In this document: in pieces, positions 25,139-47,620 of the stretch
Numbering within the stretch: position 1 is the stretch's first letter
Layout: every line of letters starts with the position of its first letter
IMG/VR virus record: IMGVR_UViG_3300022935_000005
Coordinates: 124,001 to 188,000 of that record
Reading direction: 5' to 3' (one strand)
Length of the DNA: 64,000 bases
Notes under the pieces: model-generated
What the model saw: the letters and a program-made list of their open reading frames with translations, nothing else
What the model was told of the DNA's origin: nothing
Databases searched by the model: none
Position numbers and translations under genes: made by a program

Positions 25139-25140
25139 TT

Positions 25141-25578
25141 ATGGAGAATTTAGAACTTATAGCTACTCATATGTGCAAAGAATCTTGTGTCGGATATCAT
25201 GGTAACCTATTTGGTGGAACCATGCTGGCATGGTTGGATGAAGCCGGTGTCGCCTTCGCTTCACAAGTCTGCGGTTCGCCAAGAATGGTGACAAAGTCAA
25301 TATCAGAAGTCATCTTCGTGCGGCCTGTTCGTCCTGGGCAAATCATAAAGATATACGGTGATGTCGTGAATATTGGCAACACGTCTATTAAGATTAGATT
25401 GTTTGCAAGGCGACACAGCGTAGTGAACGGCTCACAAAAGCCTGTCTGCGATGTTGAGATGACGTTTGTCAGAATTGATGGCGACGGTGAGCCTGTACCA
25501 ATCTTGAATATAAAAGAAAAGTACGCTGATAAAAAGCAGAAGATAGAATCTGAAGTAAGAAAAGATATGGAGTATTGA
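25141..25578 (+). CDS. Hotdog-fold acyl-CoA thioesterase (YciA-like)
   Basis: HGNLFGGTMLAWLDEAG, FVRPV, GNTSI, MTFVRIDGDGEP. Confidence 0.85.
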   Translation: MENLELIATHMCKESCVGYHGNLFGGTMLAWLDEAGVAFASQVCGSPRMVTKSISEVIFVRPVRPGQIIKIYGDVVNIGNTSIKIRLFARRHSVVNGSQKPVCDVEMTFVRIDGDGEPVPILNIKEKYADKKQKIESEVRKDMEY

Positions 25579-26327
25579 TGTTAGATAGAGTTGAATTGTA
25601 TGGCGATGGTATTGGAACAGTAGAGTACGTCGAGCACATGGGCAATGATTTGACAATCGTCAATAGCGCCAGAGTTTCATTTGGAAAGCACAAGGAAGAG
25701 TTAGATGAGAAAGACGAGAAGCTTATTAAGTACCTTGTTAACCACGGCCACACGAGTACGTTCGAGCATAATGTTGTCACTTTTCGCTTTGTGGTTCCTC
25801 TCTTTATTAGGAGCCAGCATCACCGTCATAGGACTTGGAGTTATAACGAGATTAGCAGACGGTATACTGACGTTGATCTAAGGTTTTATGAACCGGATAG
25901 TTTTAGGACCCAGCACAAGAGTAATAGACAGGCAAGCAACGTCCAAGAAGAGGTGGATCCTGTAATAATACCTGACTTAAGTGACGCTGGCTATGGGACG
26001 AGAGCATCACAAGTAGTGAGAGAGCACCATGTCCAGAGCTTGAACCTTTATAACAGTTTACTGTCAGCGGGAGTTTGTAGAGAGCAGGCACGAGGGGTGC
26101 TTCCTCAAAACCTCTACACAGAGTATTACGGGACATGTTCATTACATAACGCTCTTCATTTTTGTCGTCTCCGATTGCACGAGGGCGCCCAGTGGGAAAT
26201 TCAAAGAGTGGCTGAGGCCATGGTACAAATAATGTCGACATTGTATCCTGTCGCTGTGTCTGCGTGGATTGACAACTTGGATGATAAAGACCTCCGAAAA
26301 AAAATGAAAAAAAATATTAGCCTGTAA
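25578..26327 (+). CDS. thyX: FAD-dependent thymidylate synthase
   Basis: HTSTFEH; RHRTWSYNEISRRY (RHR-X7-SxR); EQARGVLP; AQWEI. Confidence 0.95.
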   Translation: MLDRVELYGDGIGTVEYVEHMGNDLTIVNSARVSFGKHKEELDEKDEKLIKYLVNHGHTSTFEHNVVTFRFVVPLFIRSQHHRHRTWSYNEISRRYTDVDLRFYEPDSFRTQHKSNRQASNVQEEVDPVIIPDLSDAGYGTRASQVVREHHVQSLNLYNSLLSAGVCREQARGVLPQNLYTEYYGTCSLHNALHFCRLRLHEGAQWEIQRVAEAMVQIMSTLYPVAVSAWIDNLDDKDLRKKMKKNISL

Positions 26328-34321: not shown

Positions 34322-37300
34322 ATGCGTCGTTCATCTCTTCTTGTGCCTGACAGGTTCATCTCTCTTCATTCCCATGATGGGTTTAGTACCTTCGATGGCT
34401 TAGGCTATCCTCAAGAGCACATCGATTTTGTGATTGAGAATGGGATGGACGGGTGGTGTCTTACCAACCATGGTCACATGAATTCTTTCGGTCACGCTTT
34501 TTTGCACGCTGAAAAGATTGCGAAGCGTGGCGGAAACTTTAAGTTTGTACCAGGGTGCGAGATGTATGTCCATCCTGATCTAGATGCGTGGCGCCTTGAC
34601 ATGCAGATCCGAGAAGCTGCTAAGAAGGGTGATAAGGCCGCGCTCATGACTCTTCGTTCTCAGCGAGAAGCTATTGCTACACCACTGACTGCAATTGTTG
34701 ATGGTGATGACGAAATTGTAGATGTTGGCACCGAAGATGCTGGTCTCACTGTTGAGAATGAAGAAGAAACCAAGTCTGCAAAGTTCTATGATCCAATCAA
34801 ACGCCGCCATCATTTGGTAGTCCTTCCCAAGACGAGCGAAGGTCTCCAGCGTCTTTTTCACCTCGTCAGTAAGGGGTATCAGGAGGGCTTCTATCGCTTC
34901 CCACGTATCGACTATAAGATGCTAAAGGAAGCGGCCGCTGGTGGTCATCTGATGGTTTCTACAGCTTGTATCGGCGGTCCAATCGCTTACGAGGTTTTCC
35001 GTCATGCTCAGCAAGTTGAGTTTGATGATCTTTCGTATAAGTTGATGGATGACCCGACTTTCCGAAACAACGTCTTGACTGGCGTTGGAAATGCGTACCA
35101 GGGTCTTGTAGACGCTGTTGGTATCGATGATGTTAATCTCGAACTTCAATTTAATAAGCTTCCTGCGCAGCATCTGGTCAACCGCGCGATTATTGAGTTT
35201 GCTAACAAGAACGGGCTACAAGATAAGCTGGTAGTCACAACCGATTCTCACTACGCACGTCCAGAACACTGGCGAGAGCGTGAGCTCTATAAGAAGCTTG
35301 GGTGGCTTAACTATCGAGAGTTTGATCCCTCCAAGTTGCCGCAAGGTATTGAAGACTTGAAGTGTGAACTATATCCTAAGAACAACGAACAGGTTTGGGA
35401 TACGTACCTTAAGACAACTGACGGTATGGATTTTTATGATGATGAGGTAGTGCACAACGCCATCACTCGCCCGTATGATCTTGTCCACAACGAAATCCAA
35501 CAGATTACCCCTGATCGTTCGATGAAGCTGCCCTCTTACGTCGTTCCTGAAGGTACTACTGACGATAAGGCTCTACTTGAAGCCTGTAAGAAGGGTTTGG
35601 TCGAGCGTGGTCTTGCGCACGATGAAAAGTACATCAAGCGTCTCAAGTATGAGCTAAAGATCATCAAGGAAAAGAATTTTTCTCGATATTTCTTGACCAT
35701 GGGCGCCATCATCGATATCGCTAAGAAGGCGATGCTGGTCGGTCCAGGCCGCGGTTCTGCTGCCGGAAGTCTCGTGGCGTATGTTCTCCGTCTTACCGAC
35801 GTTGATCCATTTGAGTATGATCTCATGTTTGAGAGGTTCCTCAACCCAAGCCGTGAAGGTGCACCAGATATTGATACTGATGTAGGTGACCGTGATCTTC
35901 TTATCAACATGATGAAAGAGGAGTGGGGCGACGAAAACATCGTTCCAATCTCTAACTACAACACTTTTAAGCTTAAGTCTCTGGTCAAGGACATCTCTCG
36001 CTTTTACGGGATCCCGTTCGATGAAGTCAACAAGGCTTTGGCTCCTGTAGAGGATGACGTGAAGCGTGCCGTGTTCAAGCCCGGCACTGATAAAAACTTG
36101 TTTGTCTTGCTTTATGAAGATGCGATTGCTCACTCGAAGACATTTCGCGACTTTATTGAGAAGTACCCTGAGGTTGCCGAGCCGATTCAGGTACTCTTTA
36201 AGCAGAACAAGGCACTTGGCCGCCACGCCGGTGGATGTATTGTTTCGGAAAACATCGCTGAGCGTATGCCTCTGATTAAAGCCCGCGGCGAACTACAAAC
36301 TCCGTGGGTTGAAGGTATGAACTACAAGCATCTTGAAACCTTCGGCTGGATTAAGTTTGACCTTCTCGGTCTTGAAACACTACGTATTGTTCAGCGTACT
36401 ATCGAGCTGATTCTTCAGCGCCGGGAGGGTATCGAGGATCCGACATTCTCGCAAGTCTATGAGTGGTTCAACAATAACATGGACCCCAAGGTTCTCGATA
36501 TGGACGACCAGCATGTTTATAAGCATGTCTACGAAGAAGGTCGCTTCCCAGGAGTCTTCCAGCTGGCTGGTCGAGGTGCTAGAAACCTCTTTATGAAAGC
36601 AAAGCCCAAGAGCATCATCGACATTGCTACTCTGACATCGATTTATCGCCCGGGCCCTCTCACTGCGAAAGTAGACAAACTGTATATCCAGGCAAAGAAC
36701 AACCCTGATGATATTGACTACGGCCATCCTCTTATCAAGGAAGTTCTTGAAGAGACATACGGTATGATTGTCTTCCAAGAGCAGATCATGAAGTTGTGTT
36801 CCGTGGTGGCTGGCTTCCCGGAGGAGGAAACGGACACAGTCCGCCGGAGCATTATGAAGCGTAAAGCTTCTGAAGCCGCTGAGTCCCTTGCTAAGGCTCG
36901 AGCGATTAAGGAACAGTTTGTTGCTGGTGCCGTCAAGAATGGTGTCGACGCACAGCTTGCCGATGATCTGTACGAAAAGATTCTCTACTTCTCAGGCTAC
37001 GGTTTCAATAAGGCGCACGCTGTTTCGTACGCTATTGACTCGTACTACTGCGCTTGGCTTCTAACATACTTTGAGGAAGAGTGGCTTTGCGCTTATCTCG
37101 AGGCGATGTCTGGTAATGACAAGAAGCGTAGTAAGGCCTTTGGTGAGGTTAAGGCTCTCGGCTATCGAGTCGTTCCGCTTGATATCAATTATGCAACCAA
37201 GAAGTGGACTATCCTCGACGGTAAGAAGTTCATGCCTTCTTTCCTTTCTTGTAAGGGCGTCGGAGAATCTGCGATCGATGAGATTGTCGCTAATCGGCCG

Positions 37301-37936
37301 TACCAGAATATCGACGATCTGTTATGGGACGAGGATGGTAAGTGGCGCCACTCTAAGTTCAACAAGCGGGCAATGGAAGCGTTAATTAATATTCGCGCAT
37401 TCGAATCCATGGATCTTGTAGGCGACGGTAAGACATTCGAGAGCTATAAGCACATGCATGAAGTCATTATAAACCGGAACACCGATATCAAGAAATGGAC
37501 TAAGCGTGATCCAGAGCGAGGAAAGAGTAATTTCAAAGAGGCGCTATTGGATACTGAGGGAATCGGTAATTGGACCCGTCGTGAGATGGTCGAAAATAGC
37601 ATGAAGCATTTCGGTTCATTTAACGCCTCCACACTCGTTAATGAGGAAATTCAGGCTCGGCTCTCTAAGAAGAATGTACGTTGTATCGATGACATCGACG
37701 AGCATGATGTATATTGGTTCTTGGTGACAGACGCTAAGCCGAAGCTTACTAAAAACAAGAAGCCATATCTTTTGGTGACGGCCACAGGACTAGACGGCAA
37801 AAATATCAGGATATTCTGCTGGGGCTGGGATGGTCAGACAGAGTTGCCCCTCTACAGCCTTTGTGTTGCAGAAGTTAAGAAAAATGATTTCGGATATCAA
37901 ACTTCTATGAGTAAAGTCAAGCTTCTTCGTATATGA
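34322..37936 (+). CDS. dnaE: DNA polymerase III alpha subunit (family C)
   Basis: PHP domain (SLHSH, TNHG, DSHY), GPGRGSAAGSLVAY, PDIDTD, KFDLLGL, YGFNKAHA. Confidence 0.95.
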   Translation: MRRSSLLVPDRFISLHSHDGFSTFDGLGYPQEHIDFVIENGMDGWCLTNHGHMNSFGHAFLHAEKIAKRGGNFKFVPGCEMYVHPDLDAWRLDMQIREAAKKGDKAALMTLRSQREAIATPLTAIVDGDDEIVDVGTEDAGLTVENEEETKSAKFYDPIKRRHHLVVLPKTSEGLQRLFHLVSKGYQEGFYRFPRIDYKMLKEAAAGGHLMVSTACIGGPIAYEVFRHAQQVEFDDLSYKLMDDPTFRNNVLTGVGNAYQGLVDAVGIDDVNLELQFNKLPAQHLVNRAIIEFANKNGLQDKLVVTTDSHYARPEHWRERELYKKLGWLNYREFDPSKLPQGIEDLKCELYPKNNEQVWDTYLKTTDGMDFYDDEVVHNAITRPYDLVHNEIQQITPDRSMKLPSYVVPEGTTDDKALLEACKKGLVERGLAHDEKYIKRLKYELKIIKEKNFSRYFLTMGAIIDIAKKAMLVGPGRGSAAGSLVAYVLRLTDVDPFEYDLMFERFLNPSREGAPDIDTDVGDRDLLINMMKEEWGDENIVPISNYNTFKLKSLVKDISRFYGIPFDEVNKALAPVEDDVKRAVFKPGTDKNLFVLLYEDAIAHSKTFRDFIEKYPEVAEPIQVLFKQNKALGRHAGGCIVSENIAERMPLIKARGELQTPWVEGMNYKHLETFGWIKFDLLGLETLRIVQRTIELILQRREGIEDPTFSQVYEWFNNNMDPKVLDMDDQHVYKHVYEEGRFPGVFQLAGRGARNLFMKAKPKSIIDIATLTSIYRPGPLTAKVDKLYIQAKNNPDDIDYGHPLIKEVLEETYGMIVFQEQIMKLCSVVAGFPEEETDTVRRSIMKRKASEAAESLAKARAIKEQFVAGAVKNGVDAQLADDLYEKILYFSGYGFNKAHAVSYAIDSYYCAWLLTYFEEEWLCAYLEAMSGNDKKRSKAFGEVKALGYRVVPLDINYATKKWTILDGKKFMPSFLSCKGVGESAIDEIVANRPYQNIDDLLWDEDGKWRHSKFNKRAMEALINIRAFESMDLVGDGKTFESYKHMHEVIINRNTDIKKWTKRDPERGKSNFKEALLDTEGIGNWTRREMVENSMKHFGSFNASTLVNEEIQARLSKKNVRCIDDIDEHDVYWFLVTDAKPKLTKNKKPYLLVTATGLDGKNIRIFCWGWDGQTELPLYSLCVAEVKKNDFGYQTSMSKVKLLRI

Positions 37937-37990
37937 TTAGCTTGGTACAAAAAGTCTACACTTAAATCTAACTGGAGTAAAATTAGTAAC

Positions 37991-39013
37991 ATGCACTTAG
38001 GCACTTATGAAGGTTTCACTGACTGTTATGTTGATATGATTTCAAAGGTCATGCGTGAACCGCAATACGAATCTGCACCTCGCGGCCAGAATATCAAAGA
38101 GATCCTCGGGGCTTCATTTACAATCAAGAACCCTCGTGACAGAATTCCTTACGTCGTAGGTCGTAAGTTTAGCATGAGTTACATGGTCGCTGAGCTGATA
38201 TGGTATCTTGCGGGTGATAATAGTACTGAGTGGATATCGAAGTATTCATCCTTCTGGAAAGATATTAGTGACGACGGTGTGACTGCAAATTCAGCGTATG
38301 GTGCCCGTCTCTTTAAGCCGCATGACAAGATTGCGCAGGGCAGATATACTCAGCTCGATTACGTGATTGAAGAGCTTAAACGAGATCCTGATTCTCGGCG
38401 AGCTGTCATGCATCTAAGAGTTCCAGATGACTCTATTGATGCGAAGCTTGATGTACCTTGTACACTAGCTCTACAGTTTTTTATTAGAAACGGTGCTCTA
38501 CACCAAGTTGCTAACATGAGAAGCTCGGACTTGATTTTTGGGATTGCTTACGATATTCCCGCATTCACAATGTTTCAAGAACTGATTGCAAATGAGCTTG
38601 GCGTTGATGTGGGTACGTACACTCACACAAGCAACTCACTCCATATCTACGAACGTCATTTTGATATGGCTGAAGAGATTACTAGAACGGGCCTCGTTGA
38701 TGAATCGCTGAATCTACAACAGGCAAATGGTCCTATGCCACCGCTGGTAGGTGATATCAAAGAAGTCCAAGAGAAGGTGGCTGAAGTCTACGAGTATGAA
38801 TCCCAACTACAGCGTTGCGAGAATTTACAGGATGTAATAAACCTACATGATTTAAGCCAGTCTTTCTCTGATTCTATGTTCCGTGATTTTGCAACTATTC
38901 TTACGTCATCTCGTCTAAGAAAACTTGGTCATAAAGCGGATGCGCGAGCAATGTCCGCGCAGACGTCCTTTAGCGGATATTCTTTTAATGTCAGGAGTAA
39001 CTCTAATGCATAA
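37991..39013 (+). CDS. dCMP hydroxymethylase-like thymidylate synthase homologue (T4 gp42-like)
   Basis: ELIWY, NSAYG, DSRRAV, PCT (Cys157), MRSSDLIFGIAYD with Asp188 at the ThyA Asn177 position, SLHIYERHF. Confidence 0.85.
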   Translation: MHLGTYEGFTDCYVDMISKVMREPQYESAPRGQNIKEILGASFTIKNPRDRIPYVVGRKFSMSYMVAELIWYLAGDNSTEWISKYSSFWKDISDDGVTANSAYGARLFKPHDKIAQGRYTQLDYVIEELKRDPDSRRAVMHLRVPDDSIDAKLDVPCTLALQFFIRNGALHQVANMRSSDLIFGIAYDIPAFTMFQELIANELGVDVGTYTHTSNSLHIYERHFDMAEEITRTGLVDESLNLQQANGPMPPLVGDIKEVQEKVAEVYEYESQLQRCENLQDVINLHDLSQSFSDSMFRDFATILTSSRLRKLGHKADARAMSAQTSFSGYSFNVRSNSNA

Positions 39014-40151
39014 GAAATACGACTACCTTATCGTAGGTGCTGGCCTTTTCGGTGCCACTTTCGCTCGGCAGCTGACTGATGCGGGATACACATGTCTAGT
39101 TGTTGATAGACGGAGCCACATCGGCGGGAATGTATACAGCGAAAAGAGAAACGGCATCGATGTTCACGTCTACGGTGCTCACATTTTCCACACTAATGAT
39201 GACCGTATTTGGGACTATGTAAATCGATTTACAGAGTTTAACAATTACATTAACAAGCCTAAGGTTCGGTACGGTAACAACATCTATTCTTTCCCGATCA
39301 ATTTGATGACTCTTCACCAGCTCTGGGGTGTTACGTCACCAGCAGAAGCAGAAGCAAAGCTAAAAGAGGTCAGGATTCCTTGTGAGAATCCCGACAATCT
39401 AGAAGATTGGATTCTATCACAGGTAGGCCCGGAGATCTATCAGACGTTCATTAGGGGGTACACGATGAAGCAGTGGCAGCGTGACCCAAGAGAGCTACCA
39501 GCCTCTATTATCAAGCGGCTACCGATTCGAATGATTTTCGAAGAGAATTACTTTTTTGACAAGTACCAAGGTATTCCAGTAGGCGGGTATACGCAAATGG
39601 TCGCGAATATGTTAGAGGGTATTGAGGTCAGGACAGGGGTCGAGTATTTTACCGACCGGTCAGAGCTTGAGTCCTTGGCACACAACGTAGTATTTACCGG
39701 TAAGGTCGATGAATATTTCGATTACTGTGAGGGTGAGCTAGAGTATCGAACCCTACGGTTCGAACATGAAGAGCTTGAGGGCGATTTTCAAGGTAACGCG
39801 GTTGTGAATTATACACATCCAGAAGTGCCCTTCACACGTATTCTAGAGCATAAGCATTTTCAGCCCCAGACGGCTTCGAAGATTGAGAACACAATCGTCA
39901 CTCGAGAGTATTCTGCAGAGTATAAGCGAGGAAAGACACCGTACTATCCGATCAACGATGCGCGAAATACTGCTCTATACCAAAAGTATGCTGCCATGAA
40001 AGCTGCGACTCCTAACGTCATTTTTGGCGGGAGGTTATCTGAATACAAGTACTATGATATGCATCAGGTGATCGGTTCTGCTCTTGTTAAGGCAAGAAAA
40101 GAAATTGAAAAACGTAAGAGCAACGACTACAATATAACAGTTGAATCATAA
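39006..40151 (+). CDS. glf: UDP-galactopyranose mutase
   Basis: VGAGLFG FAD motif, HIGGN, YGAHIFHT, YFFDKYQGIP, LEYRTL, TRILEHKHF, PYYP, GRLSEYKYYDMHQ. Confidence 0.95.
   Translation: MHKKYDYLIVGAGLFGATFARQLTDAGYTCLVVDRRSHIGGNVYSEKRNGIDVHVYGAHIFHTNDDRIWDYVNRFTEFNNYINKPKVRYGNNIYSFPINLMTLHQLWGVTSPAEAEAKLKEVRIPCENPDNLEDWILSQVGPEIYQTFIRGYTMKQWQRDPRELPASIIKRLPIRMIFEENYFFDKYQGIPVGGYTQMVANMLEGIEVRTGVEYFTDRSELESLAHNVVFTGKVDEYFDYCEGELEYRTLRFEHEELEGDFQGNAVVNYTHPEVPFTRILEHKHFQPQTASKIENTIVTREYSAEYKRGKTPYYPINDARNTALYQKYAAMKAATPNVIFGGRLSEYKYYDMHQVIGSALVKARKEIEKRKSNDYNITVES
40106..40133 (+). promoter_or_regulatory. Sigma70-like promoter TGAAAA-N16-TACAAT inside the 3' end of glf
   Basis: Recurring motif upstream of the glycosyltransferase. 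Confidence 0.55.
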
Positions 40152-40162
40152 GGAGATTTGTA

Positions 40163-41218
40163 ATGAGAGTACTTTATAGCTTTTGGGGCTTTATCACCCC
40201 GCTCGAAAAGAACACAGTTGTCAACACACCAGACGGTGAGCGAGGTAACAGGGTTGATTTTGTCAATGAACTAATGTCTCGAGGGCATACTCCAGTTCAG
40301 CTGCAGAAGATGCGCGATGAAGAGCAGTACCCAGGCGTTGAGTATGATGCAACTGGCTTCCCAGATGGTGACATTCTGTACGTTGAGTGGAGGTGGCCAA
40401 CTTGGAAGAACAGCGGAGAAAACCCAGCTGAATCTGATTACAATCGACAATGCGAGGTTCTTGATTACTATCACGCTCAGGGTGTTCCGATTATTATTCA
40501 CGACGGTGATTTGAAGATGACTCCTGAGGAAGAACTCCGATGGCCAAACGCTATTCTAGCAGATGCCTGTGTGTCACCGCAGCACCAGACCCGTAATCGT
40601 ATCACAATTCCGTGGTGCAATTACCTTAAGCGGTATTTCGAGCCAGTTGAGTATTCGTACAACTACACATACGTTGGAAACAACTACGAGCGAGAGGATC
40701 CATTTGAGAAGTATTATGTACAGCCCTCTCAGCGGCTTCGCATGGCCGGCCTACAGACATCCATCTACGGTAACTGGCTTCAAAAGTCTCCAGAGCGAAT
40801 TGATCCAGCTCTTTTGCTAGCCAAGACGCCAAGCGTTGCTTTTGGGCCACGTCTTTCCTACAAGGATATTTTCGCAGTCTTAAACGAGTCGATTACTGTG
40901 ACTCACATTACCAAGCCTGCTTACACTCCTTATGGGAACATCACAGGTCGATTCTTCGAGGCAATCAAGAGTAACGTTCCAGCCTTGGTGCCGATTGAGT
41001 TTCAGCATGCTGTTCCAGTGGGCCTTAAGGATGAGTCCCTACTCGTAAGAAGCGCTGACGATGTTGTTGAGAAAGTAAAGTGGCTTTCTACATTAAATGC
41101 TTCCGAGAGAAAAGCTCTTGTTGACGCTCAAGAAGAAGCATTACGAACCGTGATAAACCCTCATCCCGGATACCGAGTTGACCTTCTTGAAAGTGTTGCA
41201 GGAGATTTTATCCGATGA
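40163..41218 (+). CDS. DNA glycosyltransferase, T4 beta-glucosyltransferase-like (GT-B fold)
   Basis: 351 aa; HDGDLK, YVGNNYERE, YGNW, NITGRFFEAIKSNVPALVPIEF, VRSADDVVEKV, RKALVDAQEEAL match recalled T4 BGT segments in order. Confidence 0.7.
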   Translation: MRVLYSFWGFITPLEKNTVVNTPDGERGNRVDFVNELMSRGHTPVQLQKMRDEEQYPGVEYDATGFPDGDILYVEWRWPTWKNSGENPAESDYNRQCEVLDYYHAQGVPIIIHDGDLKMTPEEELRWPNAILADACVSPQHQTRNRITIPWCNYLKRYFEPVEYSYNYTYVGNNYEREDPFEKYYVQPSQRLRMAGLQTSIYGNWLQKSPERIDPALLLAKTPSVAFGPRLSYKDIFAVLNESITVTHITKPAYTPYGNITGRFFEAIKSNVPALVPIEFQHAVPVGLKDESLLVRSADDVVEKVKWLSTLNASERKALVDAQEEALRTVINPHPGYRVDLLESVAGDFIR

Positions 41219-41733
41219 AAGTAGCTTTTATTGGTCCTGACATGACTGGCAAGTCGAATATTGCTGAAGCGTTATCAGAGAGGTTGTCGATTCCAGTATT
41301 CAAGAACTCTGGAGAGTGGAAGACACAGCTGGATAGCCCAAATTACTTCCTGAACTTGCTTCGTTACGGCGGTCCGTTTTTAATGGATTTTATGAAGCAG
41401 ACCAACGTAAGCGTTATTCTGGACAGGTTCTACCCTTGTGAGCTAGTATACTCTCAAGCGTTCGATAGAGACACTGATCATCAAGCCATCGCGTGGATGG
41501 ATGAGCAGTTTTCGAATGAAGGAGGAGTCTTTATTCTTTGCCTGAGAAAAGATTATTCTGGACTAGTCGATGATGTATTCCCAGAAGACCTCCCTGGGGA
41601 GAAACTAGAAGAGATTGGCTCTCTTTATAAGGATTTTGCGAAGTGGTCCCAATGTGAAGTGATGACTCTATACACTGATGATTGGGATATCAATAGACAG
41701 ATTAAAGACATAACTGATTTTTTGGGAGTTTGA
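41215..41733 (+). CDS. dNMP kinase (thymidylate kinase-like)
   Basis: P-loop GPDMTGKS; ILDRFYPCELVY. Confidence 0.8.
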   Translation: MKVAFIGPDMTGKSNIAEALSERLSIPVFKNSGEWKTQLDSPNYFLNLLRYGGPFLMDFMKQTNVSVILDRFYPCELVYSQAFDRDTDHQAIAWMDEQFSNEGGVFILCLRKDYSGLVDDVFPEDLPGEKLEEIGSLYKDFAKWSQCEVMTLYTDDWDINRQIKDITDFLGV

Positions 41734-41734
41734 C

Positions 41735-42727
41735 ATGAGTTTGCGTAAAGCGTTAGTTACAGGGTGTTGTGGTTTTATTGGATCTCATCTTACTAGGATG
41801 TTAGTAGGACAAGGTTGGTACGTAGAGGGTGTTGATGATTTGTCGAACGGCGATCTTACATCTATCGATGACCTAAAATTCAGAGCAGTACATGATTCTT
41901 TGTTACCGTTCTATAATGCTGAACCCTCGGCTGGTAGTCTTCTTGTGATGACGTGCGATTTCGCTTCGCCAGCTGTCTTAGAGAGGGTTACAACTGGAAG
42001 TTATGATGTTATTTTCCATCTTGCTGCAAACCCCCGTGTTGAGTTCTCCGTACAAAATCCAGCTTTGACAACTAATGATAACGTTCAAAAGACTGTAGAG
42101 CTGATGTCAGCCGCAAGAAATAATATCGATCGTTTTGTCTTCGCTGCTTCTTCTGCCGCATATGGAAACGGTGTAGAGTTGCCTACTACAGAACAAGAGC
42201 AGTGTAATCCCACTTCACCATATGGTCTACAGAAGCTTGTTGTAGAGCAATTCGGTAAGCTGTATAGTGAGTTATACGGCATGGATTTTGCCGCCTTGAG
42301 GTTCTTCAATGTGTACGGTCCAGGTCAGGACGGGACTAGCCCTTACTCAACAGCAATATCTGCTTGGTGCACACGCCTAAAGAAAGGTGAGCCTCTACGA
42401 AGTGATGGTGACGGCCAGCAGTCAAGAGATCTAGTCTATGTCGAAGATGTAGCTAGCGCTCTAACGCAGGTAGCGAATCATCCAGAGAGACTTGGGTTTG
42501 AGGTCTTTAATGTTGGGACCGGTATTGCCTTGACGAACAAAGAAGTTCTAGATCATCTGACAAAGCTGTTTCCTGATGCTGAAGTAAATCATGCTCCTGA
42601 AAGACCTGGCGACGTTAAGCACACTCTAGCTGCCGCTGATCACATCAAGGAGAAAATTGGGTGGGAACCTAAGGTTGAATTTTGGGATGGTCTGACAGCC
42701 ACACTAGAGTGGTGGAAGCTAGCATGA
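41735..42727 (+). CDS. NAD-dependent NDP-sugar epimerase/dehydratase (extended SDR, GalE/WbpP-like)
   Basis: TGCCGFIGSH, FHLAA, ASSAAYG, YGLQK, LRFFNVYG, GDGQQSRD. Confidence 0.9.
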   Translation: MSLRKALVTGCCGFIGSHLTRMLVGQGWYVEGVDDLSNGDLTSIDDLKFRAVHDSLLPFYNAEPSAGSLLVMTCDFASPAVLERVTTGSYDVIFHLAANPRVEFSVQNPALTTNDNVQKTVELMSAARNNIDRFVFAASSAAYGNGVELPTTEQEQCNPTSPYGLQKLVVEQFGKLYSELYGMDFAALRFFNVYGPGQDGTSPYSTAISAWCTRLKKGEPLRSDGDGQQSRDLVYVEDVASALTQVANHPERLGFEVFNVGTGIALTNKEVLDHLTKLFPDAEVNHAPERPGDVKHTLAAADHIKEKIGWEPKVEFWDGLTATLEWWKLA

Positions 42728-43155
42728 ATCGCTCTGCCTGGCGTGGCAAGTCCTCGAAAATAAAGAAGCCATGGGGCTTCGAAATAAAGTGGACCGGCCT
42801 TTTTAATGGAAAAGAGATTCATATCTCTGATGGGAAAAGAACGAGTCTGAAGTTTAACTCTCACAAAAGCGAGATTCTTTACGTGTCAGTAGGAAGAGTT
42901 AGTATTGAATGTGCAGATGAGAATCACTTTTTAGATCCCGTAGGATCCCCGTCAAGGCTCGTTGAATTAAAGGCTGGTGAATTCATTAATGTCCAAGCAG
43001 GCTGTCCTTATAGGGTGACAGCATTAATGAATAGCATAGTGTTTGAAATATCTGATAATACTTCAGATGTTGGAAGGATTATTCTAGAAGATGATTATGG
43101 GAGAGAAGTGGATCAAACTGGCATGTGGATATTTAATCCTCCAAAGTCAGAGTAA
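42724..43155 (+). CDS. Cupin-fold protein (sugar isomerase-like), metal histidines apparently absent
   Basis: KPWG...SLKFNSHKSE...GCPYRV...FEIS...LEDDYGR. Confidence 0.65.
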   Translation: MNRSAWRGKSSKIKKPWGFEIKWTGLFNGKEIHISDGKRTSLKFNSHKSEILYVSVGRVSIECADENHFLDPVGSPSRLVELKAGEFINVQAGCPYRVTALMNSIVFEISDNTSDVGRIILEDDYGREVDQTGMWIFNPPKSE

Positions 43156-43178
43156 AAGTTAGTGAAGATGCCTATAAT
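43151..43178 (+). promoter_or_regulatory. Sigma70-like promoter AGTAAA-N16-TATAAT
   Basis: Recurring motif. Confidence 0.5.
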
Positions 43179-43187
43179 GGAGTATAC

Positions 43188-44066
43188 ATGAGCACACTAG
43201 ATCCTAATTCAGTAAACGTAGTAATCTATCACGCCGATTGTACCGATGGATTCGGCGCCGCCTACTCTGCATGGAAGTGCTTGGGCAATAGAGCAGAATA
43301 CTACCCATGCAAGCACGGGACAGAGCCACCCAACGTGAAAGGAAAGAATGTTGTCATTCTTGACTTTTCATTTAACAATGAAACGACAAAGAAGATGATC
43401 GAAGAGTCTGCCGCACTCTTGATTATCGACCACCACAAGTCTGCGATGGTTGAGCTTCATGACATTCCTAACACGCATTTCGATATGACAAAGTCAGGTG
43501 CGATGCTTTCATGGGAATTCTTTCACCCTGGGAAAGAGCCACCGAAGTTTATCAAATACATCATGGATAGAGACTTGTGGACCTGGGAACTTGACTACTC
43601 AAAAGAGTTCTCTGCCGCGTTCGATATGGTTCCTTTTGAGTTCGAAGAATTTGAAAAGTTTGAAGATGATTCCGTCTTTGACGATGCAGTGAAGAGAGGC
43701 TCATACATTCTTGCTTATAGTAAGACTGTTATAAAGAAAGTCTGCGAAAAAGCACAACAAAGAAAACTGGATGACAAAGATGTCTTAGTTGTCAATGCAT
43801 CTCACTGGATGTCAGAGATTGGTGCTCGTCTAGCTCCTGATTGCGATTTTGCTTTAATCTGGTACTGGGATCACGAGGAGGGCCACACAAAGGTTAGTCT
43901 CCGTTCATTCCATGATACTGTTGATGTAGCTGAGGTCGCAAAAAGGTTTGGCGGCGGCGGCCATAGAAAGGCTTCCGGGTTCCAGCTCCCAAAGGGATCC
44001 CACATAGAGGATATATTTGATAAACCAAAAAAGACCTTGAGGTCCAGAAAGAAGCAGGAAGAGTAA
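43188..44066 (+). CDS. DHH/DHHA1 phosphoesterase
   Basis: YHADCTDG, ILDFS, IDHH, VSLRS, GGGGHRKASG. Confidence 0.9.
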   Translation: MSTLDPNSVNVVIYHADCTDGFGAAYSAWKCLGNRAEYYPCKHGTEPPNVKGKNVVILDFSFNNETTKKMIEESAALLIIDHHKSAMVELHDIPNTHFDMTKSGAMLSWEFFHPGKEPPKFIKYIMDRDLWTWELDYSKEFSAAFDMVPFEFEEFEKFEDDSVFDDAVKRGSYILAYSKTVIKKVCEKAQQRKLDDKDVLVVNASHWMSEIGARLAPDCDFALIWYWDHEEGHTKVSLRSFHDTVDVAEVAKRFGGGGHRKASGFQLPKGSHIEDIFDKPKKTLRSRKKQEE

Positions 44067-44069
44067 TTG

Positions 44070-44624
44070 ATGAGTAAGGTTTATTCTACGATCTTAGCCG
44101 ATCCACCCTGGATGCAACGTGGAGGTGGTAAATCAAAACGAGGTGCTGACAGGCACTACCCTTTGATGAAAGAGGCAGATATCAAGAAAGTCATGTCTGA
44201 CATGCTGGATGGCAAAGTGGCCGACAATGCTCACATGTATATGTGGGTCGCCAATAACCACCTTCCTGAAGCGCTGAGAATAATAGAGCATCTGGGTTTC
44301 AAATATATCACCAATCTTGTATGGGCTAAGACTCATTTCGGTTTAGGAAGGTACTTCCGCGGCCAGCATGAGCTGTGCATATTCGCTACTAAGGGCCGCG
44401 GCTTTTCTGCTAGGACACAAGCTAATAACGTTCCCTCCCTTATTGGGGGTAAACTAGTTTCTCCTACCCGCCACAGTGCGAAGCCCGCCGAGATGTACGA
44501 ATTGATAGAAGGTAGAAGTGAGGGCCCCTTTCTGGAGCTGTTTGCGAGGACGAGACGCCCCGGCTGGGATGCGTTGGGTAATGAAGTACCTGAGGAAAAA
44601 GATGCAAAGACCGAACTGGGATGA
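44070..44624 (+). CDS. MT-A70 family N6-adenine (or N4-cytosine) methyltransferase
   Basis: ILADPPW, HYPLM, GLGRYFRGQHE, HSAKP, LELFAR, WDALGNE. Confidence 0.9.
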   Translation: MSKVYSTILADPPWMQRGGGKSKRGADRHYPLMKEADIKKVMSDMLDGKVADNAHMYMWVANNHLPEALRIIEHLGFKYITNLVWAKTHFGLGRYFRGQHELCIFATKGRGFSARTQANNVPSLIGGKLVSPTRHSAKPAEMYELIEGRSEGPFLELFARTRRPGWDALGNEVPEEKDAKTELG

Positions 44625-45021
44625 CATATGGATGAAGTTTGCCTATTTGATTGCTGACCGGTCATATGACCCGCGTCACAAGGTGGGTTCTGTAGTTGTT
44701 ACTGACTCAAACACACAAGTGCTAGCAATAGGCTACAATGGAAATTATTCAGGCGGTCCAAATGAAGTCGAGTCAAACACACCTGGCGAGTCTGGCATGA
44801 TCCACGCGGAGATCAATGCAATGATAAAGCTAGACTTCAATAATCCGAATAGAAAGATAATGTATTTGACGCTAAGTCCTTGTCGAGCCTGCGCGAAAGC
44901 TATTGTCAATGGTGGCATTTCTGAGGTGGTGTACAGCGAAGAATATCGCGATACTTCTGGCTTAGAACTACTAAGTCACGCAGGAGTCAAAGTCAGAAGG
45001 CACGATATTAAGCAACTCTAG
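44602..45021 (+). CDS. dCMP deaminase
   Basis: RPNWD, GYNG, HAEINA, PCRAC. Confidence 0.9.
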   Translation: MQRPNWDDIWMKFAYLIADRSYDPRHKVGSVVVTDSNTQVLAIGYNGNYSGGPNEVESNTPGESGMIHAEINAMIKLDFNNPNRKIMYLTLSPCRACAKAIVNGGISEVVYSEEYRDTSGLELLSHAGVKVRRHDIKQL

Positions 45022-46906: not shown

Positions 46907-47620
46907 ATGCCAGCAATTACAGACAAAGAGATTTTGCAAGTTATTCAAGAGACGTTAGGAAAACCCAAGGTCTCGAAAAAAATTCTTAATGAAGCCTATG
47001 TGCTACAACCCAAGAAGTACGACATTCAAACTGACGTTTTGAGTGAAAAATCTATTGCTGCCAATATCCAAGATTTCGAAGATACAGTAAAGATCGTGAA
47101 CGAAGTGTCTGCAAAGCTTGATACTGTAGACAGAACAGACTTGAACGCCAAAGACAGCGGCTTTCGAGAACTAAAGGTCGCAGAAGCCTATAACTTAAAT
47201 AACGCGTTTTTGACCTCATTACACTTTGATAACATAGCTGATCCAACCTCTAAAGTCTCTATGGATTCTTTGGCGTACATAAGACTCTCACGTGATTTTG
47301 GCAGTTTTGAAGACTGGCAAAAGGATTTCATAGCATGCGCGTTATCTGCTAGGGATGGGTATGTTGTAACAGTGTATAATGGTTCTTTAAACAGATACAT
47401 GAACATTATGATTGATGATTGTCAGGTTGGGATGATGGCAAACTGCTTTCCCGTGATCTGCCTGTCTGTTAGAGAAAGAAACTACTTTAGGGATTATCTA
47501 AATGATCGCCGTTCTTACGTCTTTGCTATGATGAAAGAACTTCGATGGTCATTGATCGAGAAAAGAATTAAAAGAGCCGACAAAGTGGCAAAACTTTTGT
47601 CAACACCATTAGGGGACTAG
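46907..47620 (+). CDS. Fe/Mn superoxide dismutase-fold protein lacking metal ligands
   Basis: RDFGSFEDWQKDF and PVICLSVRERNYFRDY (canonical PxxxxDVWEHAYYxDY). Confidence 0.7.
   Translation: MPAITDKEILQVIQETLGKPKVSKKILNEAYVLQPKKYDIQTDVLSEKSIAANIQDFEDTVKIVNEVSAKLDTVDRTDLNAKDSGFRELKVAEAYNLNNAFLTSLHFDNIADPTSKVSMDSLAYIRLSRDFGSFEDWQKDFIACALSARDGYVVTVYNGSLNRYMNIMIDDCQVGMMANCFPVICLSVRERNYFRDYLNDRRSYVFAMMKELRWSLIEKRIKRADKVAKLLSTPLGD

What the first reader, a model, noticed from the sequence alone, without database searches (positions are those of the whole stretch)
37991..39013. The thyA-like gene is a cytosine-modifying enzyme, not a thymidylate synthase
In RSSDLIFGIAYD, residue 188 is Asp (codon GAT at 38552). 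dUMP-specific ThyA has Asn here (E. coli N177) and T4 dCMP hydroxymethylase has Asp (D179). The catalytic Cys is in PCT rather than PCH, and NSAYG and SLHIYERHF resemble gp42. The phage separately encodes ThyX (25578-26327) for dTMP. Sequence alone cannot separate hm-dCMP, 5-methyl-dCMP or 5-hydroxy-dCMP as the product; a free hydroxyl is implied by the neighbouring glycosyltransferase.
Basis: partly seen in the sequence, partly recalled or inferred. Interest (0 to 1): 0.7.

Follow-up and report, generated by a model that had tools for sequence, protein, structure and literature searches.

The report
Phage dCMP hydroxymethylase, not thymidylate synthase
The thyA-like gene of this salt-marsh jumbo phage almost certainly makes 5-hydroxymethyl-dCMP, the starting point for sugar-coated cytosine in the phage's DNA; this is a well-known anti-restriction strategy, here in an uncultured lineage and possibly with an unusual sugar.

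Summary
ORF 37991-39013 encodes a 340-aa thymidylate-synthase-fold protein with Asp188 (GAT, 38552) where dUMP enzymes have Asn177, and Cys157 sits in P-C-T.

At eight diagnostic positions the protein is identical to T4 gp42:
- Asp188 selects cytosine.
- Asp154, three residues before the Cys, gives hydroxymethyl rather than methyl.
- Asp180, Gly184 and Trp89 are retained. The flavin-type 5-hydroxy-dCMP synthases (RB69 gp48, RL38J1 gp216) have Asn, Val and Ala there.
- Arg136 and Ser178 are the deoxyribose-type residues. MilA has Lys and Ala.

By sequence and fold the closest solved relative is MilA, including its C-terminal helical domain, not gp42.

The gene lies in a module conserved in all 10 distinct related IMG/VR loci: DnaE, this enzyme, a deoxynucleotide-kinase-like protein, a GT-B glycosyltransferase most like T4 beta-glucosyltransferase, a UDP-hexose 4-epimerase-like SDR and a cupin. 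A subclade, including this phage, also has UDP-galactopyranose mutase. ThyX and dCMP deaminase supply dTMP.

Best reading: dCMP to 5hm-dCMP to 5hm-dCTP, incorporation into DNA, then glycosylation, possibly with galactofuranose. This is a new member of a known kind. No enzyme activity was tested.

The parts
37991..39013 (+). Thymidylate-synthase-fold enzyme, predicted folate-dependent dCMP 5-hydroxymethylase (340 aa). Catalytic Cys157; Asp188 (cytosine selector); Asp154 (hydroxymethylase marker); Ser101/Tyr103; Asp180/Gly184/Trp89/Phe183 (folate-site residues); Arg136/Ser178 (deoxyribose type); MilA-like C-terminal helical domain, about residues 233-337.
   Evidence: papers PMC13326640, PMC6400193, PMC5175136, PMC8670742.
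38994..40151 (+). UDP-galactopyranose mutase (Glf). Its ATG start overlaps the 3' end of the hydroxymethylase gene by 20 nt. Present only in the subclade nearest the window.
   Evidence: Pfam GLF 9e-78. TIGR00031 at 365 bits, over the equivalog cut-off of 303.75. 76-82% identical copies in L005-L010, L012 and L014; absent in L011, L013 and L015-L018.
40163..41218 (+). GT-B fold glycosyltransferase (351 aa), candidate DNA 5hmC glycosyltransferase.
41215..41733 (+). P-loop deoxynucleoside/deoxynucleotide-kinase-like protein (172 aa), candidate 5hm-dCMP kinase.
   Evidence: PHROG thymidylate kinase 1.6e-7. Family profile hits YorR, deoxyguanosine kinase and deoxynucleoside kinase in the PDB. 31% identical over 85 aa (E 6e-7) to the kinase directly upstream of the thymidylate-synthase-like gene of Enterococcus phage 9183. 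Present in all 10 distinct related loci.
41735..42727 (+). Extended SDR, UDP-hexose 4-epimerase-like (330 aa).
   Evidence: Pfam Epimerase 1.1e-52. Best PDB matches are UDP-glucose, UDP-GlcNAc and UDP-GalNAc 4-epimerases. Below the GalE equivalog cut-off, 152 against 262 bits.
42682..43155 (+). Small cupin protein. The true start is probably the ATG near 42724. Role unknown, perhaps sugar-nucleotide tailoring.
   Evidence: PHROG 7851. Homologues in relatives hit Cupin and the mannose-6-P isomerase C-terminal domain. No PDB sequence match.
43188..44066 (+). DHH/DHHA1 phosphoesterase (NrnA/RecJ-like), conserved just downstream in most relatives.
44518..45021 (+). dCMP/cytidine deaminase-family protein, supplying dUMP for ThyX.
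   Evidence: Pfam dCMP_cyt_deam_1 2.5e-19. Found in nine of the 10 distinct relatives; L015 ends at a contig edge before this position.
25575..26327 (+). ThyX, flavin-dependent thymidylate synthase: the phage's dTMP route.
   Evidence: Pfam Thy1 1.5e-49. RHRTWSYNEISRRY motif.
34322..37936 (+). DnaE-type DNA polymerase III alpha (1204 aa), immediately upstream. Presumed to incorporate the modified dCTP.

Best explanation
The gene encodes a folate-dependent deoxycytidylate 5-hydroxymethylase.

Proposed chemistry (inferred from the conserved residues):
- Cys157 attacks C6 of dCMP.
- Asp188 reads and protonates the cytosine N3/N4 face.
- Methylene-tetrahydrofolate donates the one-carbon unit.
- Asp154, with Ser101 and Tyr103, holds water that attacks the exocyclic methylene. 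The product is therefore 5-hydroxymethyl-dCMP rather than 5-methyl-dCMP.

Proposed pathway (inferred from gene content and synteny):
- The adjacent small kinase phosphorylates 5hm-dCMP.
- Host NDP kinase makes 5hm-dCTP.
- The phage DnaE polymerase incorporates it into DNA.
- The neighbouring GT-B glycosyltransferase then glycosylates 5hmC in DNA.
- The sugar donor is made from host UDP-glucose by the phage 4-epimerase-like SDR and, in this subclade, UDP-galactopyranose mutase. That would be UDP-galactofuranose.
- dTMP is made separately by dCMP deaminase plus ThyX.

What is shown: fold, residue signature, conservation and synteny. What is inferred: all enzyme activities, the identity of the sugar, and whether cytosine is replaced fully or only in part.
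For: Family and fold:
- Pfam PF00303 at 1.3e-36, but below all NCBIfam ThyA equivalog cut-offs.
- Best solved relative by sequence is MilA, E 1.8e-40 against about 1e-23 for ThyA.
- Best solved relative by fold is also MilA: AF2 model pLDDT 96.2, Foldseek TM 0.83/0.88 over 332 columns including the C-terminal helical domain.

Residue signature:
- At E. coli positions 80/126/143/147/167/169/173/177 the window reads W-R-D-T-S-D-G-D, identical to T4 gp42.
- ThyA reads W-R-L-H-S-D-G-N. Both 5-hydroxy-dCMP synthases read A-R-E-T-S-N-V-D. The CRW-SP2 protein (annotated dUMP hydroxymethylase) and its PaMx11 homologue read A-R-D-N-S-D-G-N and M-R-D-N-S-D-G-N.

Literature basis for each position:
- N177D switches the substrate to dCMP (PMC8670742; PMC13326640).
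- Positions 177 and 147 best separate modified-cytosine contigs.
- The Asp three residues upstream of the Cys marks hydroxymethylases. T4 D145N makes no 5hm-dCMP, and Ser94 partners it (PMC6400193).
- D169N marks 5-hydroxy-dCMP synthases.
- MilA K133/A176 give the CMP preference, and A176S/K133R reverses it (PMC5175136). The window has Arg136 and Ser178.

Conservation:
- Cys157, Asp180 and Gly184 are invariant in 104 homologues.
- Asp154, Thr158, Ser178 and Asp188 are conserved in at least 90% of them.

Context:
- A DnaE / thymidylate-synthase-like / kinase gene set is present in all 10 distinct IMG/VR relatives at 51-62% identity. A glycosyltransferase, the epimerase and the cupin accompany it in most of them.
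- The same kinase + thymidylate-synthase-like or thymidylate-synthase-like + GT (+Glf) pairing occurs in Enterococcus phage 9183, Lactobacillus phage ATCCB and Rhizobium phage RL38J1.
- ThyX and dCMP deaminase are present, and this is the only PF00303 gene in the 281-kb genome.
Against: - No activity was measured. Every assignment rests on residue signatures derived from a handful of characterised enzymes.
- The D169N rule for 5-hydroxy enzymes is new (2026). It was used to pick enzymes that then tested positive; no test is reported of whether enzymes that keep Asp169 lack the activity.
- The Leu143 rule for methyl versus hydroxymethyl was not checked here against a bona fide dCMP methyltransferase (XP12). 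I could not retrieve that sequence.
- The phylogeny does not by itself assign function. The two Asn177 phage enzymes nest inside the same radiation, and gp42 sits on a very long branch.
- No homologue of T4 dCTPase gp56 or dNMP kinase gp1 was found. Exclusion of unmodified dCTP is therefore unexplained, apart from a small MazG-like ORF outside the window.
- The glycosyltransferase shows no significant BLAST similarity to T4 BGT. Other GT-B enzymes score almost as well structurally.
- The genome has a second, large glycan island that could also consume UDP-galactose or UDP-galactofuranose.
Confidence: 0.8

Rival explanations
1. It is a dCMP methyltransferase, as in Xanthomonas phage XP12. It would take dCMP but complete hydride transfer from tetrahydrofolate, giving 5-methyl-dCMP. 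The neighbouring glycosyltransferase would then act on something else.
For: Asp at position 177 alone is what turns ThyA into a dCMP methylase in mutants. The folate-site residues Asp180 and Trp89 are present.
Against: The Leu143 position is Asp154, conserved in at least 90% of 104 homologues. This Asp marks hydroxymethylases, and T4 D145N makes no 5hm-dCMP. Ser101 is present where ThyA has Val93. The ThyA C-terminal tail that closes over folate is replaced by a MilA-like helical domain, which in MilA lies away from the active site. Signature identity with gp42 is 8 of 8. A glycosyltransferase, kinase and sugar-nucleotide genes are co-conserved.
Confidence: 0.05
2. It is a flavin- and O2-dependent 5-hydroxy-dCMP synthase of the RB69 gp48 / RL38J1 gp216 type. 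The sugar would then be attached directly to the ring oxygen, as in RL38J1, where galactose is the base-proximal sugar and a phage Glf is present.
For: RL38J1 has the same gene grammar (thymidylate-synthase-like, glycosyltransferase, kinase, plus Glf elsewhere). The paper's structure search also finds MilA as the best PDB match for its enzyme. Asp177 and an acidic residue at position 143 are shared.
Against: The published diagnostic D169N is not met: the window has Asp180, invariant in 104 homologues. The window keeps Trp89 and Gly184, where both 5-hydroxy enzymes have Ala and Val. The two 5-hydroxy enzymes fall outside the clade that holds the window protein.
Confidence: 0.05
3. It is a CMP (ribonucleotide) hydroxymethylase like MilA or BcmA. 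It would feed a nucleoside-type small molecule or an RNA-related process rather than DNA.
For: MilA is the closest solved relative in both sequence and full-length fold, including the extra C-terminal helical domain.
Against: The two residues shown to set MilA's ribo preference (Lys133, Ala176) are Arg136 and Ser178 here. That is the state of T4 gp42 and ThyA, and of the MilA double mutant that prefers dCMP. No MilB-like N-glycosidase context was seen. The gene sits between the replicative polymerase and a deoxynucleotide-kinase-like gene, in a phage.
Confidence: 0.04
4. It is an ordinary, merely divergent thymidylate synthase or a dUMP hydroxymethylase acting on uracil nucleotides.
For: Source databases annotate the homologues as thymidylate synthase. 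Two phage enzymes with Asn at position 177, one of them annotated as a dUMP hydroxymethylase, nest in the same radiation.
Against: It has Asp188 rather than Asn and Thr158 rather than His or Asn. It is below every ThyA equivalog cut-off. ThyX already supplies dTMP.
Confidence: 0.02

Closest known systems
T4 gp42 deoxycytidylate hydroxymethylase (EC 2.1.2.8; PDB 1B5E and the ternary complex of PMC6400193)
   Same: Identical at all eight diagnostic active-site positions (W80, R126, D143, T147, S167, D169, G173, D177 in E. coli numbering). It also shares the Ser94/Tyr96 pair (NSxYG) and the SLH(I/V)Y-RHF motif. The genomic logic matches too: a glycosyltransferase next door, and a phage dCMP deaminase plus a separate thymidylate synthase.
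   Different: Overall sequence similarity is low, and gp42 is not among the 60 best PDB sequence matches. gp42 is 246 aa and lacks the roughly 100-residue C-terminal helical domain. The window phage uses ThyX rather than Td, a different kinase family from gp1, and has no gp56 homologue.
MilA / BcmA CMP 5-hydroxymethylases (PDB 5JNH, 5B6D, 5JP9)
   Same: Closest solved relative: E 1.8e-40, about 29% identity, TM 0.83/0.88 over the full length including the extra C-terminal helical domain. Asp is present at both the 177 and 143 positions.
   Different: MilA's ribose-preference residues Lys133 and Ala176 are Arg136 and Ser178 here. The context is a phage replication module, not a nucleoside-antibiotic cluster.
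Flavin-dependent 5-hydroxy-dCMP synthases (RB69 gp48, DLP3 gp80, RL38J1 gp216; NAR 2026, PMC13326640)
   Same: Thymidylate synthase fold, Asp177, an acidic residue at position 143, and the Cys-Thr dipeptide. RL38J1 has the same thymidylate-synthase-like, glycosyltransferase, kinase order and also encodes Glf, with galactose attached to the base.
   Different: Those enzymes have D169N, G173V and W80A, which the window protein does not. They are shorter (238-259 aa) and lack the C-terminal domain.
Phage glycosyltransferase + epimerase DNA-hypermodification clusters found in metaviromes (Pyle et al., bioRxiv 10.1101/2023.12.21.572611)
   Same: GT-B enzymes are frequently next to thymidylate synthase homologues. 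In their 'subclass II' clusters the glycosyltransferase depends on a partner sugar epimerase to glycosylate 5hmC.
   Different: The clusters tested there generate 5hmC after replication, by a methyltransferase plus a TET-type enzyme. No galactopyranose mutase is mentioned in that preprint.
Lactobacillus phage ATCCB genes 0045-0047
   Same: An independent three-gene cassette: a thymidylate-synthase-like protein with the same 8/8 signature, a true T4 BGT homologue (31% identity over 364 aa), and Glf (45% identical to the window's).
   Different: It is an unrelated 80-kb phage. Its glycosyltransferase is a recognisable BGT homologue, whereas the window's is only remotely similar. Neither has been characterised experimentally.

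Membership tests
Deoxycytidylate 5-hydroxymethylase (T4 gp42 type, folate-dependent) | Thymidylate synthase fold with the catalytic Cys nucleophile | tested here: met
   PF00303 at 1.3e-36. AF2 model pLDDT 96.2 matches TS-family structures. Cys157 aligns with C146 of ThyA and C148 of gp42 and is invariant in 104 homologues.
Deoxycytidylate 5-hydroxymethylase (T4 gp42 type, folate-dependent) | Asp in place of ThyA Asn177 (cytosine specificity) | tested here: met
   Asp188, codon GAT at 38552, aligns with gp42 Asp179. 158 of 163 aligned homologues have Asp.
Deoxycytidylate 5-hydroxymethylase (T4 gp42 type, folate-dependent) | [quoted passage not shown] | tested here: met
   Asp154 and Ser101. 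The signature and the loss of product in T4 D145N come from PMC6400193.
Deoxycytidylate 5-hydroxymethylase (T4 gp42 type, folate-dependent) | Folate-site residues retained (ThyA Asp169, Trp80, Gly173; gp42 Phe174) | tested here: met
   Asp180, Trp89, Gly184 and Phe183. Asp180 and Gly184 are invariant in 104 homologues.
Deoxycytidylate 5-hydroxymethylase (T4 gp42 type, folate-dependent) | Deoxyribose-type substrate residues (Arg126', Ser167) | tested here: met
   Arg136 and Ser178. The rule comes from PMC5175136.
Deoxycytidylate 5-hydroxymethylase (T4 gp42 type, folate-dependent) | Converts dCMP plus methylene-THF to 5hm-dCMP plus THF | not testable with these tools
   Needs an enzyme assay or in vivo LC-MS.
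Canonical thymidylate synthase ThyA (EC 2.1.1.45) | Asn177, His147, Leu143 and a score above the equivalog cut-offs | tested here: not met
   The residues are Asp188, Thr158 and Asp154. All eight NCBIfam ThyA equivalog models score below cut-off.
5-hydroxy-dCMP synthase (flavin-dependent TS homologues) | Asn at the ThyA Asp169 position (published diagnostic) | tested here: not met
   Asp180 (GAC, 38528). RB69 gp48 and RL38J1 gp216 have Asn, and they also differ at positions 80 and 173.
CMP hydroxymethylase (MilA/BcmA) | TS core plus a C-terminal helical domain | tested here: met
   Foldseek matches MilA over 332-342 columns, TM 0.83/0.88.
CMP hydroxymethylase (MilA/BcmA) | Lys133' and Ala176, conferring ribonucleotide preference | tested here: not met
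   Arg136 and Ser178.
dUMP hydroxymethylase (annotated phage examples: CRW-SP2, and its homologue in PaMx11) | Asn177 together with an acidic residue at position 143 | tested here: not met
   Position 177 is Asp. CRW-SP2 and PaMx11 have Asn177 and Asn147.
T4 beta-glucosyltransferase-like DNA glycosyltransferase (for the neighbour 40163-41218) | Compact GT-B fold with the UDP-sugar-binding Arg/Glu motif (BGT RVWE) | tested here: met
T4 beta-glucosyltransferase-like DNA glycosyltransferase (for the neighbour 40163-41218) | Uses 5hmC in duplex DNA as the acceptor | not testable with these tools
   Inferred only from synteny.

The most novel reading that the evidence does not exclude
This widespread salt-marsh, estuarine and marine jumbo-phage lineage may replace cytosine with 5-(galactofuranosyl-oxymethyl)cytosine. 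The sugar donor would be made by a phage-encoded UDP-hexose 4-epimerase and UDP-galactopyranose mutase, and transferred by a glycosyltransferase family only remotely related to T4 BGT. As far as the papers found here go, that would be the first furanose hexose reported on 5hmC DNA. Sister subclades that lack Glf would carry a pyranose instead, giving a natural series of sugar swaps on one scaffold.
Probability: 0.35. Interest if true: 0.6.

Novelty: new member of a known kind. Interest (0 to 1): 0.42.

Why it matters
- Source databases annotate this gene family as 'thymidylate synthase'. Reading it correctly predicts that a common uncultured jumbo-phage lineage carries hypermodified, probably glycosylated, cytosine.
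- Such DNA affects restriction and CRISPR evasion. It can also bias library preparation and sequencing of environmental viromes, and it shapes how host defences are interpreted.
- The case is a clean worked example of three recently published residue rules (positions 177/147, 143 and 169). Together they now let sequence alone separate dTMP, 5m-dCMP, 5hm-dCMP and 5ho-dCMP producers as predictions.
- The linked Glf, epimerase and GT-B genes offer a candidate new DNA sugar and a new DNA glycosyltransferase family, which may be useful for enzymatic 5hmC labelling.

Tried and rejected
- Megablast of the 6.2-kb module against 50,697 phage records gave no match. The lineage has no cultured close relative.
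- BLASTP of the glycosyltransferase against T4 BGT, RL38J1 gp215 and ATCCB_0046 was not significant. Only fold and profile comparisons link it to BGT.
- A PDB sequence search with the glycosyltransferase and with the cupin gave nothing useful.
- phmmer of T4 gp56 (dCTPase), gp1 (dNMP kinase), BGT and the RB69/RL38J1 kinases against all ORFs of the 281-kb genome gave no hits. The only exception was a marginal match of the window kinase to a phage G 'thymidylate kinase'.
- dUTPase families PF00692 and PF08761 are absent from the genome. PF13524 does not reach significance at genome scale.
- Phylogeny was tried as a way to assign function and rejected as decisive. The reference enzymes sit on very long branches, and the two Asn177 phage enzymes nest among Asp177 enzymes.
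- I checked whether the lineage is the 'moraphage' group of PMC12619734. That paper does not mention thymidylate synthase or the mutase, so no link could be made.
- Laying four salt-marsh metatranscriptome libraries on the module showed identical low-depth contigs. These are assembler contigs, and DNA carry-over cannot be excluded, so this is not counted as evidence of transcription.
- I could not obtain the XP12 dCMP methyltransferase or the MilA sequence as session objects. XP12 was not compared at all. MilA was compared only through the HMMER and Foldseek outputs.
Full report
**1. The observation**

The window is bases 124001-188000 of a 280,913-bp IMG/VR virus record, estimated 92% complete. 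Nearly all long ORFs are on the + strand and GC is about 45%.

ORF 37991-39013 (+) is open and encodes 340 aa. Reading the DNA directly:
- 38552-38554 is GAT (Asp188).
- 38459-38464 is TGT ACA (Cys157-Thr158), preceded by Pro.
- 38450-38452 is GAT (Asp154).
- 38528-38530 is GAC (Asp180).

Alignment with reference enzymes fetched from public records gives these correspondences:
- Asp188 matches E. coli Asn177 and T4 gp42 Asp179.
- P-C-T matches E. coli P-C-H and gp42 M-C-T.
- NSAYG matches gp42 NSNYG.
- SLHIYERHF matches gp42 SLHVYSRHF.

The Asp is not an accident of one sequence:
- 158 of 163 aligned homologues have it.
- Among the five with Asn are E. coli ThyA, the CRW-SP2 protein annotated as a dUMP hydroxymethylase, and its PaMx11 homologue. 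The other two were not identified.
- All 10 distinct homologues from related viral contigs have Asp.

**2. What the protein is**

It belongs to Pfam Thymidylat_synt (1.3e-36). It nevertheless falls below every one of eight NCBIfam thymidylate-synthase equivalog cut-offs.

Against solved structures, the best sequence match by far is MilA, the CMP 5-hydroxymethylase of mildiomycin biosynthesis. MilA scores E 1.8e-40, against about 1e-23 for the best ThyA, and T4 gp42 is not in the top 60.

An AlphaFold2 model built on 104 homologues is very confident (pLDDT 96.2). Foldseek aligns it with MilA over its whole length (332-342 columns, TM 0.83/0.88). ThyA structures cover only the core (TM about 0.55). 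The last ~100 residues therefore form the extra helical C-terminal domain described for MilA. That domain lies away from the active site and seems to be needed for folding (PMC5175136).

**3. Substrate and product, from residue signatures**

Four published rules apply.

(a) Position 177.
- Asn to Asp switches the enzyme from dUMP to dCMP.
- In a metavirome genotype-phenotype study, positions 177 and 147 were the two best discriminators between thymidylate synthase homologues on modified-cytosine contigs and those on unmodified contigs (PMC8670742).
- The window has Asp188 and Thr158.

(b) Position 143.
- ThyA has Leu. Hydroxymethylases have Asp or Glu three residues before the Cys.
- In the T4 ternary complex this Asp145, with Ser94, positions water at the exocyclic methylene, and D145N makes no 5hm-dCMP (PMC6400193).
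- The window has Asp154 and Ser101.

(c) Position 169.
- The flavin- and O2-dependent 5-hydroxy-dCMP synthases discovered in RB69, DLP3 and RL38J1 carry D169N. This substitution was used successfully to pick further such enzymes (PMC13326640).
- I fetched RB69 gp48 and RL38J1 gp216 and confirmed that they read Asn at 169, Val at 173 and Ala at 80.
- The window protein keeps Asp180, Gly184 and Trp89, as do ThyA and gp42.

(d) Ribose versus deoxyribose.
- MilA and BcmA have Lys133' and Ala176 where the deoxy enzymes have Arg and Ser. The A176S/K133R double mutant reverses MilA's preference to dCMP (PMC5175136).
- The window has Arg136 and Ser178.

Taken together, the eight-position signature W-R-D-T-S-D-G-D is identical to that of T4 gp42. 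It differs from ThyA, from the two phage enzymes with Asn at 177, and from the 5-hydroxy enzymes.

In the alignment of 104 homologues, Cys157, Asp180 and Gly184 are invariant. Asp154, Thr158, Ser178 and Asp188 are conserved in at least 90%.

A maximum-likelihood tree puts the window protein in a well-supported clade of 28 metagenomic sequences, inside a broad radiation of Asp143 enzymes. The 5-hydroxy enzymes lie outside that radiation, with the outgroup. The reference branches are long, and the two Asn177 phage enzymes nest within the radiation. The tree alone therefore does not assign function; the signature does.

**4. Genomic context**

The neighbours downstream of the DnaE-type polymerase (34322-37936) and the hydroxymethylase are:
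- UDP-galactopyranose mutase at 38994-40151. It scores above the TIGR00031 equivalog cut-off, and its start overlaps the end of the hydroxymethylase gene by 20 nt.
- A 351-aa protein at 40163-41218.
- A 172-aa P-loop kinase at 41215-41733.
- An extended SDR at 41735-42727, whose best solved relatives are UDP-hexose 4-epimerases.
- A cupin, a DHH phosphoesterase, an MT-A70 methyltransferase and a dCMP deaminase.

ThyX lies at 25575-26327, with its RHR...S motif. The hydroxymethylase is the only PF00303 gene in the genome.

The 351-aa protein:
- It models confidently (pLDDT 93.7) as a GT-B glycosyltransferase.
- A profile-profile comparison with a BGT alignment gives 77% probability over the C-terminal, sugar-nucleotide-binding domain. 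Family-invariant Arg263 and Glu266 align to the RVWE motif of BGT.

The kinase family profile hits deoxynucleoside and deoxyguanosine kinases and SPbeta YorR.

**5. Conservation of the module**

A scan of IMG/VR found 17 loci, three of them identical to the window. The 10 distinct relatives share 51-62% identity in the hydroxymethylase.

- All 10 keep DnaE, the thymidylate-synthase-like gene and the kinase together. Most also keep the epimerase, cupin, DHH protein and deaminase.
- Gene order is shuffled in some. In L016-L018 it runs glycosyltransferase, kinase, hydroxymethylase, epimerase.
- Glf is present only in the subclade nearest the window.
- L011 carries a different PF13524-type glycosyltransferase. 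L013 has an unassigned 440-aa ORF in that position.

Independent phages show the same grammar:
- Lactobacillus phage ATCCB has a thymidylate-synthase-like gene with the 8/8 signature, then a genuine BGT homologue, then Glf.
- Enterococcus phage 9183 has a kinase (31% identical to the window kinase over 85 aa) directly upstream of a thymidylate-synthase-like gene with the same signature, followed by sugar-nucleotide genes.
- Two other Enterococcus phages, phiVPE25 and phiVFW, carry a BGT homologue, and their DNA was shown to carry glycosylated cytosine (PMC4999554). I did not test how they relate to phage 9183.
- Rhizobium phage RL38J1 has thymidylate-synthase-like (5-hydroxy type), glycosyltransferase, kinase, plus Glf elsewhere. 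Galactose is the base-proximal sugar.
- GT-B enzymes next to thymidylate synthase homologues, and glycosyltransferases that depend on a partner epimerase, have been described in metaviromes (bioRxiv 10.1101/2023.12.21.572611).

**6. Mechanism proposed**

The sequence and fold evidence establish a thymidylate-synthase-fold enzyme with the complete dCMP-hydroxymethylase active-site signature, embedded in a conserved nucleotide/sugar module.

The inferred pathway is:
- dCMP plus methylene-THF gives 5hm-dCMP.
- The small kinase, then host NDP kinase, give 5hm-dCTP.
- DnaE incorporates it into DNA.
- The GT-B enzyme glycosylates 5hmC in DNA. Its donor comes from UDP-glucose through the epimerase and, in this subclade, Glf, which would make it UDP-galactofuranose.
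- dTMP comes from dCMP deaminase plus ThyX.

Open points:
- How unmodified dCTP is excluded is unknown. No gp56 or dUTPase-family gene was found, only a 107-aa MazG-like ORF at G000:262279-262449.
- The roles of the cupin and the DHH protein are unknown.
- The sugar's identity is unproven.
- It is also unclear whether Glf and the epimerase additionally, or instead, feed the large glycan island at G000:36-54 kb. That island holds GT2, GT10, GT11 and GT4 enzymes, sulfotransferases and GDP-fucose pathway genes.

**7. Comparison, novelty and verdict**

Functionally this is a gp42-type dCMP hydroxymethylase. Structurally it is a MilA-type member of the family, carrying the C-terminal domain.

It is not a ThyA, not a 5-hydroxy-dCMP synthase and not a CMP-preferring enzyme. 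In each of those cases a defining feature was tested and not met.

The kind of system is long known: pre-replicative cytosine replacement followed by DNA glycosylation. This makes the gene a new member of a known kind. The distinctive elements are the uncultured jumbo-phage lineage and the Glf link:
- The lineage occurs in many salt-marsh runs and, at partial word share, in estuary, freshwater and marine runs. Homologues occur on contigs up to 290 kb.
- The Glf link hints at a galactofuranosyl-5hmC not reported in the papers found here.

The main correction is that product type can now be predicted from sequence.

Noticed in passing
G000:C1:36000-55500 (locus L032; outside the window, about 70-88 kb upstream of its first base): A large separate glycan-biosynthesis island. 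It holds four GT2-type glycosyltransferases, a GT10-like and a GT11 (fucosyltransferase families), two GT4 enzymes, two sulfotransferases, DegT-type aminotransferases, GDP-mannose 4,6-dehydratase and a further SDR epimerase. It suggests a fucosylated or sulfated glycan made by the phage, on the virion or the host surface. It could also consume UDP-galactose or UDP-galactofuranose.
   Followed up: partly
G000:C1:262279-262449 (outside the window): A small MazG-like NTP pyrophosphohydrolase ORF (107-aa open frame, PF03819, 25 bits). It is the only candidate found for removing unmodified dCTP. No T4 gp56 or dUTPase-family gene exists in the genome.
   Followed up: partly
window 24122-25578: A glutamine-synthetase-like protein (Gln-synt_C 1e-21, 338 aa) and a 4HBT thioesterase (7e-16) lie directly upstream of ThyX and overlap it. 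This is an odd pairing inside a nucleotide-metabolism block, and its function was not examined.
   Followed up: no
window 44067-44624: An MT-A70 family adenine methyltransferase lies between the DHH phosphoesterase and the dCMP deaminase. The DNA may therefore also carry N6-methyladenine. It is only 29-34% identical in the relatives, far less conserved than its neighbours.
   Followed up: no
window 46907-47620: A 237-aa ORF with an Fe/Mn superoxide dismutase C-terminal domain (1e-13).
   Followed up: no
L026:4049-7104 (Lactobacillus phage ATCCB, MK504445.1 34336-37391): A compact cassette: a thymidylate-synthase-like gene annotated 'thymidylate synthase' but carrying the full dCMP-hydroxymethylase signature, then a beta-glucosyltransferase homologue, then UDP-galactopyranose mutase. 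It is an isolated phage in which galactofuranosyl-5hmC could be tested directly.
   Followed up: partly
L016:10367-10966 and L013:10009-10584: The Glf-less relatives carry a thymidine kinase (PF00265, about 1e-32 to 1e-35) in the module. The window has no equivalent at that position. The gene content of the module varies around a constant hydroxymethylase/kinase core.
   Followed up: no
L005-L018 versus window 34322-43155: Across the relatives the hydroxymethylase is less conserved (51-62% identity) than its neighbours: Glf 76-82%, and the glycosyltransferase 79-84% in the nearest subclade. Active-site residues stay fixed. The divergence seems concentrated outside the core, but I did not quantify it.
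   Followed up: no
window 37500-43300: Contigs identical to the module occur in four salt-marsh metatranscriptome libraries at low depth, and in more than a dozen salt-marsh DNA runs. Standard Illumina libraries therefore recover this DNA, whatever its modification. Transcription is not demonstrated.
   Followed up: partly
L034:1-1249 and 3925-5277 (Enterococcus phage 9183): This phage also places a RecJ-like DHH exonuclease a few kb upstream of its kinase and thymidylate-synthase-like pair, echoing the DHH phosphoesterase in the window's module. It may point to a recurrent role for DHH enzymes in feeding or policing the nucleotide pool of cytosine-modifying phages.
   Followed up: no
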